From: Euprymna scolopes
Lineage: Eukaryota
Length of the DNA: 64,000 nt
Direction: 5' to 3' (one strand)
Assembly (NCBI GenBank): GCA_053919585.1
Contig: CM132802.1
In this document: piece by piece, positions 5,946 to 22,549 of the stretch
How the letters are laid out: each line of letters opens with the position of its first letter
Position numbering within the stretch: position 1 is the first letter of the stretch
Program-made: the position numbers and the translations under genes
Notes under the pieces: model-generated
Databases searched by the model: none
What the model saw: the letters and a program-made list of their open reading frames with translations, nothing else
Told to the model about the DNA's origin: nothing

Positions 5946-7189
5946 ATATTGAGAAAAGTGTGTCTTCAAGCAGCATACTCGATAGTATAGTAATTTGGCC
6001 TATTGAATTATCAAACCCATTAGTCTATTATTATCTATAAATTTAATGCAATGTGACATAATTAAGAAAATTCATTCACAACTATAAATGAAATAACTGT
6101 TTGCGTGTAGTTACTTAAATTCAGACTTTGAATCTTCACCTATTTGTATTCCTAAAAACAACGGATTAACATCGATGTTTTGTCGTTTTATCTACTCTAA
6201 ATCTATCTCTGCCCGGCCTGCTTAATTCGGGCGTCCCCATTCTGTTTTCTGCTTTTCTAACCTGCAGAAATTAAAATGTATTGCGAACAGACATGTGCCT
6301 AGTAAAAACCGTATTGACCCACGTTAGACACGATCGCAAATAGTAGAATTTTATGGCCAAATATCAATCCACTTTATTAGGGGTGAAAAAATAAATAAAA
6401 TATTTTAACATCTGTTGAAACAGAAATGGAAGGAAAGAAATCATGTACTTTAATTTTGTGTACATAAGTTGCGTTCATGTGCATTTAACGAAATAAATTA
6501 GTTATGTTATAGAATTAGACATATATTCTATTATTTATAGTTAAAAATCATTAAAATTAAATAAAAACTTGTTAATAGAACGTCAGTGCTCCAAAATTGA
6601 TACCACGTCATAAAGTTTGCTAAAATGTTAGAAGTATTTTATGTTATTAAATCTAACTATGATTTTCATAGCTTTACAAAAAGAAGGAAAACAATCAACG
6701 ATACTAATAGTATGTCATAAAATTTTATACATAGAACTGTTATCGACTTGTTTATTTAAGAAAGATCAACCTCCAAAAATATAGAATTTCTCATCCTTAC
6801 ACTAAATTTGAAACAACCATGATCTATATGGCGAATTCATCGTTTTTCAATATTCGAAAACCAACTAATAGCTTTTTTATTGTTTGCGTCCAGGGGTCTA
6901 AATTAGACCCCTAGCACGTTTATGTTTACTCGGTAAGACCATAACATGAAAAAAAAAACAAAGCAAGTAGTTGTTTTTTTTAAACGAATTTAAATCTGTT
7001 AAAATCTATTATTCTTGGGCGACTTTTTGCCAAAAAAATTATTATATAAAAAAACAGAATAATATACTTTTTTTTACTATTTTAAAGAGCATTTTAAATG
7101 AAAAAAATTCTAAAACCACATTTTTCACCACAATTTCATCCCGATCGATAAAACATTGAAATATTTTTAAAAATATTCTTGAGCCTGTT

Positions 7190-18753: not shown

Positions 18754-19738
18754 TTTTTTTTTTTTTTTTTTTTTTTTACAAAGGCATCACCACATTATCA
18801 AGGCCCAGAGGCCACTCAAGGATAAGGGTTAAAGAGTGTACAGTAGAAGTTGGTCAATATAGTAATCATTAGTAATGAAAATTTGGTAAATTTAATAACT
18901 TATATGGAACGGCTCATCAAGAACTTATTTACTTTAGACTTGAACACAACCATATTGTAGTCAGCCGGAAAGCAGGAAAACGGAAGACAATTCCACAGGC
19001 GTGCAGTTCTAAGAAAGAAGCTTTGTTCATGGAATCTATGTTTAGGTTTAGGCACAGATAAAGAGTGGGGGAAATTATTGATAGTGTTTACAGCTAGACG
19101 AGTGTTTCTTGTGAAAGTTTGGCGAGGGGGGACCATAGATTGAAGCTCAGTTGAACACTTTCCATGAAAATAACGATACATCAGAGACAAACTCACAACA
19201 TCTCTTCTGTGAGATAGAGGTTGTAAGGAGGAGAAAAGGACATCTCCTACGAGGCTACGAAGTCTATTTTGAACTCTATCAAGGCAGGACAAGTCTTTTC
19301 TAGCAGCTCCTGCCCAGATGTGGCAACAGTATTCCATCATTGGACGTACCTGGCTCTTATATAGATAGAGAATAGCATCAGCAGTGAGATATCTACTGGA
19401 TCGATAGAAAGATCCCACCATTTTTCCAGCGGCCTTGGCAACAGATTTGATATACGTGTTCCATTTAAGATCAGGAGTAATGGTCAAGCCCAGAAACTTG
19501 TCAAAACTTGAGGCCTCCTGAAGACGAGAGCCATTCATTTCAATTGATGACAAATGTGGATTAGAATGTTGATGATGTAAAGAGAGAAGCTTGGTTTTAG
19601 ATGCATTAAAAGTAACCAGCCACTCCTTTCCCCATTGTACTACATGCTCAAGATCAGAGGAGAGAGAATTGGAGAGTACTTGCTCGTTTACTGTCTTAGA
19701 TGTGGTACCATAAATGGTAGTGTCGTCAGCATAAATGT
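18754..19738 (-). mobile_element. 5'-truncated CR1/Zenon-like LINE, family B, RT C-terminal half open
   Basis: ORF 18900-19784 contains YADD, WLVTFNASKT, MEYCCHIWAG and FFLRTARLWN. 3' UTR stem-loop and ~24-nt poly(A) (T run from 18754). Confidence 0.95.
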
Positions 19739-19849
19739 TTGTCAAGTAACAAAAATAAACAAACACTATAAATGTTTGAGTCAAGAATTACGCTCTACAG
19801 ATGAAGATCAATTAAATTATTACAAAAACTACACAACTACATACATCAT

Positions 19850-20430
19850 CTGAGACTAACCTTCATTCCTGATCTGAAAAGAAACACCCACATAAAATTT
19901 GTTTCAAAGATTGCTAGAAAATAGGGTTGGATCACTACCACTGCAGTAGGTATCTCATTGCCGATAAAAATTATTTATCTGTATTAGAGTTACGTACGCA
20001 GTAAAACAGAGAACTGTTGCCACATCTGGGTAGAAGCTGCTCGATACGCCTTATCGTCCCTTGATAGAGTTCAACACACGCTTCAAAACATAGTAGGTGT
20101 CACCCTTTTCTCTTTTCTCCCACCTCTTTTTCAGCGAAAACACGTTGCGAGACTTTATATGCAGTATTGTTTTTTTTTCACGCCAATTGCTCATTTGACA
20201 TCTAATCTATAGTCCACTAGTTGCCAACCTGTCACAAATAACTCGAGTAGCTACAATCTGTATATAAGATTAGCTCTATTTGTGTCTAAAACTAAACACA
20301 GATTCCATGAACAACGCTTGTTTTTTCGAACTGCCCGCCTGTGGAACACTATTGCATTGGTCTACTTCCAGATTGTATTCAACATGGTAACTTTAAAATC
20401 AAATGTAAAGAAGGGTTTTTAATCCGTCCC
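19850..20430 (+). mobile_element. Older, degenerate family B-like LINE fragment
   Basis: Remnants of PDLK..IK.V.K, CCHIW, SLDRVQ, FFRTARLWN and FKSNV, with stops and frameshifts. Confidence 0.8.
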
Positions 20431-20526
20431 TGTAAATATACACATTCTACCCAAATTATCCAATTAACGTTTACAATACTTACTTAATGTTACAATATTT
20501 TTTACTATAATGGAGTAGATATTTAA

Positions 20527-21232
20527 TTGTTGCCCACCTCAGCAATATTTGGCACAAGGCCAGAAAGTGGGGATCAATGCAGACTCCCCTAAGGTAGGGG
20601 CACTCCTATAATTGCAAACATTGCATGAGTAAACCCGTCGGTATTCCCCGGTTTGGGCGCCTCAAGCGACAAGCAATAAACTTGCACAACCGGAGGGCAC
20701 GGTGGCAAGGCCTAGGAGGGTGGTCCTCCTGGGTATTATCCAGGCGGTGTATCTCAGTCCGAAATGTGCTGGGCTGGTTCCCGGCCCTCACCTGTCGGGC
20801 TGAGAGTCAAGAGCGGATCCTTGATGTGTACTACTACTCTGCCTCCCTGCATCCGAAGCCGCTAGGAGACACATCCCATCATAGTCGGACTATAATGGGG
20901 TAGTATCTATTTGCTGCACACCACAGCAAAATGTGACACAATGTGGAGAACAGGCACGCTCCCCTAAAGAAGGGGCACTCTCGCCTCAACAAAACTTGCC
21001 TGGACACACCCGTCGGCATTCCCCGGTAATGGAAATACCGGTGGCAAGGCCTGGGAGGGTGGGCCTCCTAGGTAGTACACAAGCGGTGCCCGTCACGTGC
21101 TGGGACGATTCCCGGCCCCTTACCTGTCGGGCTGAGTGTCAAGAACGGATCCTTGACGAGTACACTACCCTGCCTTTCTGCAGCCGAAGCCACTAGGAGA
21201 CACATCCCATCATACCGGAATTTATTATGGTA
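20527..21232 (+). repeat. Tandem dimer of a GC-rich, multi-hairpin unit (20527-20902 and 20909-21232); candidate structured RNA element
   Basis: Shared blocks include CTCCCCTAA..AGGGGCACTC, CCCGTCGG.ATTCCCCGGT, GGTGGCAAGGCCT, ACCTGTCGGGCTGAG, CGGATCCTTGA and CTAGGAGACACATCCCATCATA. Stems are conserved with compensatory changes. Confidence 0.85.
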
Positions 21233-22549
21233 TGCTCTCGCACAGTCGGGAGAGTCTATTCATAAATGATGCTGGTAGGAACTGACGAATCGAATTAATT
21301 CACGCCCTGCTACCAACCAATCAGAAACGAGAATTGCTCCATAAATATTAAACCTTTCTGTAGCAATTTCGCATATATTTTCTCCGTCTCAACACGGGAA
21401 GAGCCTTTTGCTCTCTGAGTTCCAACTCGAGAACTATCTATTGCAAACCAGTCACCTCCAGGAATTGTGTAGAACAGCGAACTATCAGAAACTATTCTGA
21501 AACTAAACATGGCTTACACATCTAGAAACCTACCGCATTACACACATTAATCTTTATTTTCGGGAGGCTTTCATTATAAATGATGACTCCCAGTTGAAAA
21601 ATTACTTTTTCAGATTAAATAAGCTATAGATAAGCAGTTATAAAATTCCATATATATAAGTCTCATATGATGAAAATTTAGTATGATTTTTTAAGGAAAA
21701 TCGTATATGTTAAAACAGGTTTAACTAACGTCTCTTTCTATTATATTTTGTCATTATATATTCAAGAGATATTACTTAAGAAATAGTACCTAGTTTTCGT
21801 AATAATTTAAAAAAAAATAGAGTTTTATTCTTCTAAGAGAAACAGACTGTTAAGAGTAAATAAGTAATTTTATGATTTATAATATTTTATAATGTATACT
21901 TGTTTAATTCTACTTATAATTCGAATACCTATTCTAGTATATACGACTCTAGCATCAATCGTTTACATCAGGAAAACCCCATCTCTAGTTATATCTGTTA
22001 AGCTCAAATTACTATAAGAACATTTAGCTTTCCTTCCAGTTTTCTATACTATTCCAGATAGTATAAATGCATCTCCACGTACGGGCACATATATTGAACA
22101 CGCAGCCCATAACATATCATGGCAAACTGCGTAACAATTTTACATACCACCAATCTTTTCTATATAATAGCAACAATTTTCTTCTATTACATTAATTTCT
22201 CTAGTTCTCTTATCTCCATCCACAATGCATCCCCGTTTTCCTCTCGCGATTCATTATTTGGCTCCTCATGTAACTATCGCCTAATATGTAATCAAGCATC
22301 TTCTCTCCTTTTCTAATGAGAAATATTAGGCTTCAAATATCTATGTATAAAGGGTTTACTTATCCTACATACCTAACGGATGTAAAACCGTTATTGAATA
22401 AACGATGTAATCTATATACATTAATATACAAGTTACAAAAGCATCTTATCCAAGGCATGAAAATGTTTTTTACTATAGGCTTTAAAAATAAAGCTACAAA
22501 ATACAATTTGAAATTTGTTTATCTTCAAAGTGCACTTTTATAAATATTA

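What the first reader, a model, noticed from the sequence alone, without database searches (positions are those of the whole stretch)
20527..21232. Tandem dimer of an unassigned ~300-nt structured RNA with compensatory base changes between copies
Seen: two diverged GC-rich units in AT-rich DNA, with no credible ORF. Stems are kept while loops vary. (a) CCCCT-aaggt-AGGGG vs CCCCT-aaaga-AGGGG. (b) CCGGTT...AACCGG (20648-20693, 34-nt insert) vs CCGGTA-atggaaa-TACCGG (21023-21041), a covarying pair with a variable-length arm. (c) CCTAGGAGG/CCTCCTGGG vs CCTGGGAGG/CCTCCTAGG, where U-G becomes U-A and A-U becomes G-U. (d) GCTGGG/CCCGGC in both. (e) GTCAAG/CTTGAT vs CTTGAC. (f) A possible long-range GGTGGC pairing with GCCGCT vs GCCACT. 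Most wobble pairs work only on the + strand; the last hairpin (20875-20899) favours the minus strand. Inference: structure has been selected at the RNA level. Candidates are a retrotransposon 5' UTR/IRES-like leader, a SINE or retrozyme-like unit propagated as a multimer, or a new ncRNA/ribozyme. I see no match by eye to tRNA, SRP, RNase P, hammerhead, HDV or twister cores.
Basis: partly seen in the sequence, partly recalled or inferred. Interest (0 to 1): 0.8.

Follow-up and report, generated by a model that had tools for sequence, protein, structure and literature searches.

The report
Hairpin-rich tandem repeat inside copia LTR
The two GC-rich units are worn copies of a 383-base, hairpin-rich, non-coding module that sits in variable tandem number near the start of the long terminal repeat of a Ty1/copia jumping gene; here it lies in an old, lone LTR, so it is not a new RNA gene, although the module's folded shape has been kept by selection in the active elements.

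Summary
Window 20518-21232 holds two head-to-tail units that are 81% identical, with no ORF. They are not a free-standing RNA gene, SINE or retrozyme. They lie inside a 1,039-bp solo LTR (20488-21526, + strand) of a Ty1/copia retrotransposon.

Two full-length elements elsewhere in this 5.9-Gb genome have the same LTR head and tail. Their LTRs flank gag, protease, integrase and RT in copia order. Four solo LTRs have 5-bp target duplications.

The 383-nt module sits 30-31 nt inside the LTR, upstream of the promoter-like boxes and so in U3 (inferred). It occurs in 0 to at least 10 tandem copies.

Across 83 units the module folds into about 15 helices (z about -8). Several pairs change on both sides and stay paired. 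Between unit subtypes, stems change 3-5 times less than loops. The window copies decay equally in both, so they are dead. Pairing is equally good on both strands, and no known RNA family matches.

A second copia-type LTR family, with an unalignable LTR body, carries units 96-98% identical at the same spot. The module has therefore moved between families.

Its function is unknown; my best guess is a cis-acting structure in the element's 3' UTR. The scan had already reached the copia-LTR reading on two other windows, and I re-tested it here.

The parts
20488..21526 (+). Solo LTR of a Ty1/copia retrotransposon (1,039 bp; starts TG, ends CTAGA), old and decayed
   Evidence: It aligns to the 5' LTR of the full-length element in L061 at 74-83% identity over head, units and tail. 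Head and tail are conserved at more than 25 other loci. No PBS follows it, no PPT precedes it, and no second LTR lies in the window. The 5-bp flanks CTTAA and AACCT do not match.
20488..20517 (+). LTR head, 30 nt, ending in the short repeat TATAATGG(A/G)GTA that also ends every unit
   Evidence: The head is conserved in type-1 LTRs. In LTRs with no unit it is joined directly to the tail.
20518..20902 (+). Module unit A, an old 'A-type' subtype, 385 nt
   Evidence: Alignment A2. It differs from the A-type consensus at 13.6% of unpaired and 10.4% of paired sites, and 106 of 120 pairs remain. Fold z is -2.8.
20903..21232 (+). Module unit B, an old 'B-type' subtype, 330 nt, with a private 36-nt deletion and a further 8-nt gap
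   Evidence: 71 of the 88 pairs that can be scored remain. Fold z is -1.0.
20875..20900 (+). Junction hairpin at the end of unit A (CCCATCA, variable middle, TAATGGGG). Its 3' arm is the repeat that also ends the LTR head.
   Evidence: Across the family there are 40 distinct middles in 64 units, and 37 of 40 fold better than their shuffled versions.
21233..21526 (+). LTR tail. It holds a TATA-like box (about 21259-21267), a CCAAT (21317-21321), a second TATA/ATTAAA-like box (21340-21352), and the remnant of the gag start codon (21510-21512) 15 nt before the LTR end.
   Evidence: The tail is conserved in more than 20 loci and is 78% identical to the L061 tail. In L061 and L062 the gag ORF starts at this ATG. 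The promoter role of the boxes is inferred from sequence only.

Best explanation
Shown:
- The finding is the internal tandem repeat of an old solo LTR of a Ty1/copia retrotransposon.
- The LTR is built as a head of about 30-31 nt, then N copies of a 383-nt module, then a tail of about 290 nt.
- Every unit ends with the same 12 nt (TATAATGGGGTA) that ends the head, so the units are bracketed by direct repeats.
- N ranges from 0 to at least 10 among copies, and is 1 versus 0 in the two LTRs of one element.
- The A-then-B dimer seen in the window recurs at seven or more independent insertion sites. It was therefore copied as a dimer by retrotransposition and was not made in place.
- The module is non-coding and folds into about 15 helices.
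- In the lineages that kept transposing, stems were conserved 3-5 times better than loops, and several pairs were repaired by changes on both sides.
- After insertion the window copy decayed neutrally.
- Units 96-98% identical sit at the same spot (...GGGGTA|TGA...) of a second copia-type LTR family whose LTR body is otherwise unalignable. The module is therefore a cassette that has been exchanged between families.

Inferred:
- The module lies in U3. It would then be transcribed only from the 3' LTR, as part of the 3' UTR of the genomic RNA, and copied early in minus-strand DNA synthesis.
- Copy number changes, and the transfer between families, come from reverse-transcriptase template switching or unequal recombination at the short direct repeats.
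- The most likely role is a cis-acting nucleic-acid structure that helps the unspliced genomic RNA (export, stability or expression), in the manner of retroviral CTE, RxRE or RcRE elements. I put that role at about 0.3. The identity as a copia-LTR repeat I put at about 0.95.
For: LTR identity:
- The head and tail flanking the arrays are conserved at more than 25 loci.
- 5-bp target duplications are present: L019 AAACG, L014 AAACT, L013 GATGA, L018 ACAAA.
- LTR pairs lie about 4.7 kb apart. In L061 and L062 they flank ORFs with Retrotran_gag_2, Pol_BBD, gag_pre-integrs, rve and RVT_2, with integrase before RT.
- The two LTRs of each element are 98.3-98.4% identical. A polypurine tract precedes the 3' LTR of L062, and a PBS-like GGTTATGTGCCCAGCG follows both 5' LTRs.
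- The window aligns to the L061 LTR along its whole length.

Copy number:
- About 20 of 30 LTRs sampled by their tail have 0 units. The others have 1 to 4.
- L029 has 10 or more units.
- RNA and DNA contigs show both the form that skips 382 nt and the form that goes back 378 nt.

Structure:
- The consensus unit has an MFE of -184.7 kcal/mol, z -7.9.
- 94.6% of cells are paired, against 37-47% when the 3' partners are slid by 1-3 columns.
- Pairs changed on both sides include 5/15, 55/79, 165/173 and 234/270.
- The stem-versus-loop substitution contrast between subtypes gives p 3e-5, 3e-3 and 8e-4. For the window copies against their own subtype consensus it is not significant.

Exchange between families.
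Against: - The window LTR has no matching 5-bp duplication.
- The transcription start and the poly(A) site were not mapped, so the U3 placement rests on sequence motifs alone.
- There is no strand asymmetry. G-U-type and A-C-type variants are equally common, and the minus strand folds slightly better. This does not favour a purely plus-strand RNA function.
- Elements with no module have transposed recently (L062, and about two thirds of the young LTRs sampled). The module is therefore dispensable.
- The RNA libraries hold the units, but the unit-to-gag depth ratio is similar to that of a probable DNA run. Expression is therefore not shown.
Confidence: 0.85

Rival explanations
1. The module is a selfish hitchhiker. 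It is a non-coding cassette with no benefit to the retrotransposon. It persists because its hairpins and flanking short repeats make reverse transcriptase pause and switch template. That multiplies it in tandem and copies it into other co-packaged LTR families.
For: - The module is dispensable: about 20 of 30 young LTRs and both LTRs of L062 lack it.
- Copy number is unstable, 1 versus 0 within one element.
- Near-identical units occur in two LTR families whose bodies cannot be aligned.
- Pairing is equally good on both strands, as expected if both the RNA template and the minus-strand DNA template matter.
- Junctions with truncated units occur in type-2 LTRs (L065, L068).
Against: There is no direct evidence that hairpins raise switching here. 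Long persistence with stems conserved 3-5 times better than loops would also fit a benefit to the host element.
Confidence: 0.25
2. The module acts on DNA as a U3 enhancer or regulatory array. It would be a set of inverted-repeat protein-binding sites upstream of the LTR promoter, amplified like the enhancer repeats of retroviral LTRs.
For: - It lies upstream of the TATA- and CCAAT-like boxes.
- It occurs in variable tandem number.
- The strand symmetry of tolerated changes suits double-stranded DNA.
Against: Changes on both sides that keep complementarity, and a junction hairpin with 40 different self-complementary middles, point to nucleic-acid pairing rather than fixed protein half-sites. 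Fifteen different helices in 383 nt is not a typical enhancer layout.
Confidence: 0.2
3. The module began as a small mobile or cellular RNA, such as a SINE or a small RNA gene, that was captured in the LTR. This would match the Cassandra, Helenus and Ajax elements (PMC10886601).
For: The unit is bracketed by a 12-nt direct repeat that looks like a target duplication. One hairpin (GGGCCGG, loop, CCGGCCC, with GGTTCCCGGCC) resembles a tRNA T-arm and box B by eye.
Against: - ARAGORN finds no tRNA in young units.
- Rfam finds no tRNA, 5S, 7SL or snRNA match at E up to 10.
- There is no significant similarity to this genome's own 5S rRNA.
- No free copies outside LTRs were seen.
Confidence: 0.1
4. 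The module is an independent structured RNA: a new ribozyme, retrozyme or viroid-like circular RNA, or an ncRNA gene.
For: The units are tandem, GC-rich and highly self-complementary, with a size typical of such RNAs. A tandem junction is present in RNA-library contigs.
Against: - No self-cleaving ribozyme family matches on either strand of old or young arrays.
- The units are embedded in LTRs with their own ends and target duplications.
- The tandem junction also exists in the genome, so it says nothing about circles.
- There is no strand preference.
Confidence: 0.03

Closest known systems
Tandem repeats in the U3 region of LTRs (for example the enhancer repeats of murine leukaemia virus LTRs; variable repeats in the LTRs and UTRs of plant and Drosophila LTR retrotransposons). 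Cited from my own knowledge.
   Same: A variable number of head-to-tail copies at one fixed place in U3. They are gained and lost through template switching or unequal recombination and are inherited through retrotransposition.
   Different: The unit here is long (383 nt) and GC-rich and is built of about 15 helices. It shows compensatory changes and stem-specific conservation, and it is shared by two LTR families that cannot otherwise be aligned.
Cassandra, Helenus and Ajax (TRIMp3): LTR elements whose LTRs carry a 5S rRNA- or tRNA-derived sequence (PMC10886601)
   Same: A structured, foreign-looking RNA-like module sits inside an LTR. That paper proposes an origin by insertion of a small element into an LTR.
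   Different: No 5S, tRNA or Pol III box could be recognised here. The host is an autonomous copia element, not a TRIM. The module is in tandem and is optional.
Retroviral cis-acting RNA export or expression elements in or next to the 3' LTR (MPMV CTE, HTLV RxRE, HERV-K RcRE). Cited from my own knowledge.
   Same: Multi-hairpin RNA of a few hundred nucleotides in the 3' part of an unspliced retroelement RNA. CTE activity is known to rise with copy number.
   Different: There is no sequence or Rfam similarity. Function is untested. The lack of strand bias and the dispensability of the module do not fit an essential RNA signal.
Retrozymes (tandem or LTR-borne hammerhead elements that give circular RNAs). 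Several families in this same genome were reported by earlier notes of this scan.
   Same: Non-coding, tandem, structured units a few hundred nucleotides long.
   Different: There is no hammerhead or other known ribozyme. The units are part of a copia LTR rather than self-standing arrays in (TA)n.

Membership tests
Ty1/copia LTR retrotransposon (LTR) | Two direct LTRs flank an internal region that encodes gag, protease, integrase, then RT/RNase H (integrase before RT) | tested here: met
   In L061 and L062 the LTRs lie about 4.7 kb apart. Pfam finds Retrotran_gag_2, Pol_BBD, gag_pre-integrs, rve and RVT_2 in that order. The ORFs are split by stops in both copies.
Ty1/copia LTR retrotransposon (LTR) | Defined LTR ends (TG...CA type) and 5-bp target-site duplications | tested here: met
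   Family LTRs start TGTTGC and end CTAGA or CTACA. Target duplications are AAACG, AAACT, GATGA and ACAAA at four solo LTRs. The window copy itself shows no matching duplication (CTTAA versus AACCT).
Ty1/copia LTR retrotransposon (LTR) | A PBS directly after the 5' LTR and a polypurine tract directly before the 3' LTR | tested here: met
   GGTTATGTGCCCAGCG follows both 5' LTRs. AAAAAATAAGGAGGA precedes the 3' LTR of L062. Reading the PBS as complementary to the anticodon arm of initiator tRNA-Met, as in Drosophila copia, comes from memory and was not tested.
Self-cleaving ribozyme element / retrozyme | A recognisable ribozyme core (hammerhead, HDV-like, twister, pistol, hatchet, hairpin, VS) in each unit | tested here: not met
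   Rfam at gathering threshold on the whole window gave nothing. At E up to 5-10, the window dimer, a young LTR and a young three-unit array gave only noise such as miRNA and lncRNA models. A wholly new ribozyme class cannot be excluded this way.
Self-cleaving ribozyme element / retrozyme | Unit-length circular or linear RNA | not testable with these tools
   Only contigs of runs were available. The junction that goes back 378 nt also exists in genomic arrays.
SINE | A Pol III head derived from tRNA, 5S or 7SL | tested here: not met
   ARAGORN finds nothing. Rfam finds nothing. The local alignment score to this genome's own 5S rRNA is matched or beaten by 131 of 500 shuffles on the plus strand and 8 of 500 on the minus strand.
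SINE | Dispersed free copies with their own ends, a tail and variable target duplications | tested here: not met
   In the loci sampled with the unit, the arrays whose flanks could be read lie between an LTR head and an LTR tail. Most are type 1 and three loci are type 2. A few are truncated or run off the locus.
Satellite DNA | Long homogeneous arrays that are independent of a mobile element | tested here: not met
   Arrays of 1 to at least 10 units are bounded by LTR head and tail. Longer arrays were not surveyed genome-wide.
Retroviral-type cis-acting RNA element (CTE, RxRE or RcRE-like) | A conserved multi-hairpin fold in the 3' UTR or 3' LTR of the genomic RNA | tested here: inconclusive
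   The fold and the stem conservation are shown. The 3' UTR location is inferred from promoter-like boxes. There is no strand bias.
Retroviral-type cis-acting RNA element (CTE, RxRE or RcRE-like) | Binds an export or expression factor and raises the level of unspliced RNA | not testable with these tools
   This needs reporter and binding assays.

The most novel reading that the evidence does not exclude
The 383-nt module is a semi-autonomous non-coding cassette of LTR retrotransposons. It moves between copia families that are otherwise unalignable, always landing at the same short motif near the start of U3. It multiplies there in tandem, and selection on its roughly 15 helices keeps it intact. 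Its role would be either a copy-number-dependent RNA export or expression element for intronless genomic RNA, or a parasite of reverse-transcriptase template switching. Its junction hairpin, with a hypervariable but always self-complementary tip, would be part of that mechanism.
Probability: 0.3. Interest if true: 0.65.

Novelty: new variant of a known kind. Interest (0 to 1): 0.38.

Why it matters
The window itself holds only a dead solo LTR, which is an ordinary object. The family is more useful for three reasons.
- It is a clear natural case in which non-coding structure inside an LTR is under measurable selection. Stems are conserved 3-5 times better than loops between active lineages, and there is an internal neutral control in the dead copies.
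- It shows a structured cassette exchanged between LTR families.
- If the module turns out to be an RNA export or expression element, or a driver of template switching, it would give a tractable model for cis-acting structures in invertebrate retrotransposons, which are almost unstudied.

It also warns annotators that GC-rich, covarying tandem units in this genome are LTR parts and not new RNA genes.

Tried and rejected
- Tandem Repeats Finder did not report the dimer, which is too diverged and has indels.
- The repeat finder with 9-nt seeds missed the short stems.
- Rfam at gathering threshold on the window, and at E-value thresholds on the window dimer, a young LTR and a young three-unit array, gave only chance-level hits.
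- ARAGORN found no tRNA-like gene in the window or in five loci.
- RNAalifold on all 83 units gave a poor, partly long-range consensus (35 pairs, -21.9 kcal/mol). Decayed and gapped rows dominate the alignment. I used the MFE of the majority consensus and my own pair counts instead. I did not send a 412-character structure string to the count of structure pairs.
- A 5S rRNA origin, which I suspected by eye, was rejected against this genome's own 5S gene.
- The strand call from wobble pairs showed no asymmetry.
- RNA evidence: two RNA-seq libraries (oligo-dT and polyA) hold contigs of the units, the tail and gag. All runs are kept only as contigs, and the unit-to-gag depth ratio resembles that of a probable DNA run. 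There are no ends, no strand and no proof of transcription.
- My first idea was a SINE-like retroposon with variable target duplications. I dropped it once the 5-bp duplications, the TG start and the LTR pairs with copia genes were seen.
- A nested insertion as the cause of the type-2 context was rejected. No type-1 head or tail is present at those junctions.
- L069 (a type-2 LTR followed by a PBS-like sequence) has no long ORF downstream, so the internal region of the type-2 family was not identified.

Full report
**1. The observation**

Window 20000-21800 shows two GC-rich blocks in AT-rich DNA.
- A pairwise alignment gives 81% identity. Unit B has one 36-nt gap and one 8-nt gap.
- In the register set by the family, the units are 20518-20902 and 20903-21232.
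- No reading frame of a consensus trimer stays open for more than 70 codons.
- The whole window has no Rfam match at gathering score, and 20400-21400 has none better than E 0.12. ARAGORN finds no tRNA.

**2. It is a high-copy repeat with fixed flanks**

A search of the window's own genome (5.9 Gb) with the dimer gave 5,536 first-look candidates. All 40 that were scored gave matches, at 69-87% identity and mostly in arrays with a period of about 383 nt.

The arrays are not free-standing.
- At more than 25 loci they are preceded by the same head of about 30 nt (TGTTGCAATATTTTGGAGCTATAATGGGGTA).
- They are followed by the same tail of about 290 nt, ending GGCTTACACTTCTAGA. Beyond these the flanks are unrelated.
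- Four copies have clean 5-bp target duplications: AAACG, AAACT, GATGA and ACAAA.

In the window the whole element runs from 20488 to 21526.

**3. It is a copia LTR**

Two earlier notes of this scan, on other windows of the same genome (s1-279847, s1-295498), say the 383-nt units are a repeat inside a Ty1/copia LTR. I tested this myself.
- A search with the tail alone found two pairs of tails about 4.7 kb apart on the same strand.
- The fetched loci L061 and L062 have head plus tail on both sides of an internal region of about 4.3 kb.
- The ORFs of that region hit Retrotran_gag_2, Pol_BBD, gag_pre-integrs, rve and RVT_2. Integrase comes before RT, which is the copia order.
- The two LTRs of each element are 98.3-98.4% identical.
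- A polypurine run precedes the 3' LTR of L062, and GGTTATGTGCCCAGCG follows both 5' LTRs. From memory, this resembles the complement of the anticodon arm of initiator tRNA-Met, the primer type used by Drosophila copia. I did not test that.
- The gag start codon lies 15 nt before the LTR end.

The window copy aligns to the L061 LTR over head, both units and tail at 74-83% identity. It has no PBS, no PPT, no second LTR in the window and no matching target duplication. It is an old solo LTR or LTR remnant.

**4. Where the module sits and how its number varies**

In LTRs without a unit, the head is joined directly to the tail (...TATAATGGGGTA|TGATCCC...).
- Each unit ends with the same 12 nt, so the units are bracketed by direct repeats.
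- The module is 30-31 nt from the LTR start. It lies upstream of a TATA-like box, a CCAAT and a second TATA/ATTAAA-like box in the tail. I infer that this is U3, but no transcript ends could be mapped.

Copy number varies widely.
- Of 30 LTRs sampled by tail only, about 20 have no unit, four have 1, three have 2, one has 3 and two have 4.
- L029 has at least 10 units.
- L061 has 1 unit in its 5' LTR and 0 in its 3' LTR. Copy number therefore changes quickly.

Units fall into subtypes. The window's A-then-B order recurs at L003, L006, L007, L013, L005, L021 and L016. The dimer was therefore inherited through retrotransposition and did not arise in place.

**5. Is the structure real and selected?**

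The majority consensus of 83 aligned units (A2) folds at -184.7 kcal/mol, with z -7.9 against dinucleotide shuffles. The minus strand folds at -197.8 kcal/mol, z -8.7.

For the 120 local pairs in 15 helices:
- 94.6% of cells are standard pairs, against 37-47% when the 3' partner is slid by 1-3 columns. This control is generous, because the structure was derived from the consensus.
- Pairs changed on both sides include 5/15 (TA 67, CG 11), 55/79 (GC 64, AT 12), 54/80, 143/157, 165/173 (GC 70, CG 6) and 234/270 (AT 53, GC 21).

The cleanest test compares the consensuses of three unit subtypes.

| Comparison | Unpaired sites changed | Paired sites changed | Fisher p |
|---|---|---|---|
| A-type vs B-type | 16.4% | 3.7% | 3e-5 |
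| A-type vs young | 11.4% | 3.3% | 3e-3 |
| B-type vs young | 16.4% | 5.4% | 8e-4 |
| Window unit A vs A-type | 13.6% | 10.4% | not significant |
| Window unit B vs B-type | 14.6% | 11.3% | not significant |

Stems were therefore protected while the lineages were active, and the window copy has since decayed neutrally.

Between the two window units themselves there is no pair compensated on both sides. Thirteen pairs changed on one side and stayed paired, and 19 pairs are lost in one unit. Their folds are only weakly better than shuffles.

- (a), (c), (d) and (e) are family helices.
- (b) is a private deletion.
- (f) is unsupported.

**6. Which strand?**

For pairs that are Watson-Crick in the consensus, single transitions that give G-U (tolerable on the + strand) and those that give A-C (tolerable on the - strand) are equally frequent. 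The counts are 45 versus 52 sites shared between loci and 30 versus 26 private sites.

The + fold has 5 conserved local G-U pairs. The - fold gains a similar number where the + strand has A-C.

The pairing cannot be assigned to RNA of one strand. It may matter in both the RNA and the minus-strand cDNA, or in DNA.

**7. The junction hairpin**

Each unit ends in CCCATCA, a variable middle, then TAATGGGG. The 3' arm is the direct repeat.
- Among 64 units there are 40 different middles, and 37 of 40 fold better than their own shuffles.
- Middles are often shared within an array and differ between arrays.
- I could not decide whether this reflects selection for a stem or a palindrome-making mutation process.

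**8. Exchange between LTR families**

Three loci (L010, L017, L024; L010 and L017 cover the same array) carry the array in a different context.
- That second LTR type starts TGTGAAATG and ends CTTAACA. It has 5-bp duplications (TTCGG, AATAA) and gave 1,948 first-look candidates.
- Its tail shows no BLAST similarity to the type-1 tail. Yet the units inside it are 96-98% identical to units in type-1 LTRs.
- They sit at the same ...GGGGTA|TGA... junction, and no type-1 head or tail is nearby, so this is not a nested insertion.
- Most type-2 LTRs have no unit. Two have truncated units with other junctions.

The module has therefore moved between families. I infer that this happened by template switching or recombination at the short shared motif.

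**9. Origin and expression**

- No tRNA, 5S, 7SL, snRNA or ribozyme model matches young units.
- This genome's own 5S rRNA shows no significant similarity.
- Two RNA-seq libraries (oligo-dT and polyA) and several unlabelled runs hold contigs of the units, the tail and gag. These include both the no-unit junction and the tandem junction.
- Only contigs were available, and the unit-to-gag depth ratio resembles that of a probable DNA run. Transcription is therefore not shown.

**10. Reading**

- Shown: the finding is the internal repeat of a dead solo copia LTR. The module is structured, selected in active lineages, optional, unstable in number and shared by two LTR families.
- Inferred: it lies in U3 and so in the 3' UTR of the genomic RNA. 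It acts in cis as a nucleic-acid structure, with an export or expression element as my leading guess at about 0.3. The rivals are a selfish template-switching cassette (0.25) and a DNA enhancer array (0.2).
- An independent RNA gene, ribozyme or retrozyme is very unlikely (0.03).
- Related published designs are the LTRs with captured small-RNA sequences (Cassandra, Helenus, Ajax; PMC10886601). This module fails their defining test, which is a recognisable small-RNA gene.
- The kind (tandem repeat in an LTR) is known. The long, covarying cassette shared between families is a new variant.

Noticed in passing
L061 (G000:C31:51970300-51979800), reverse-complement coordinates 1853-2007 and 7005-7160: In this full-length copia element both LTRs are preceded by the same (TA)n run plus about 125 nt. 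These are 99% identical between the two sides. The repeated block is therefore longer than the LTR as defined at other loci. This could be an LTR variant with a 5' extension, a tandem-element arrangement or a duplication.
   Followed up: partly
L061 and L062, LTR end and first bases after it; remnant in window 21510-21526: The gag start codon lies inside the LTR, 15 nt before its end. The PBS-like sequence is read in frame as part of gag, a layout I recall from yeast Ty1.
   Followed up: partly
L064-L074 (type-2 LTRs): The second LTR family (TGTGAAATG...CTTAACA, about 1,948 first-look candidates) has its own short tandem repeat of about 60 nt near its 3' end (GCCGCCATCTTTGTTACTGGCAATTACACTCAGGATC...). 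It occurs in one to six or more copies. In L069 the LTR is followed by GGTTATGGGCTCAG, a PBS-like sequence close to that of the type-1 family.
   Followed up: partly
Family-wide; window 20875-20900: The tip of the unit-junction hairpin is hypervariable: 40 variants in 64 units. It is nearly always self-complementary, it is shared within arrays and it differs between arrays. No explanation was established.
   Followed up: partly
window 18900-19784 (- strand): A 294-aa ORF has a weak RVT_1 match (E 2e-5, below Pfam's cut-off). It is probably a fragment of a non-LTR or Penelope-type reverse transcriptase and is unrelated to the copia LTR.
   Followed up: partly
L020 (G000:C41, about 52851000-52852810): A four-unit LTR is inserted in a (TG)n microsatellite, with TG repeats on both sides.
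   Followed up: no
G000:C18:127.42-128.24 Mb: A large 5S rRNA gene cluster (dozens of hits at about 115 bits) turned up while I tested the 5S-origin idea. One further strong 5S hit lies on C5.
   Followed up: no
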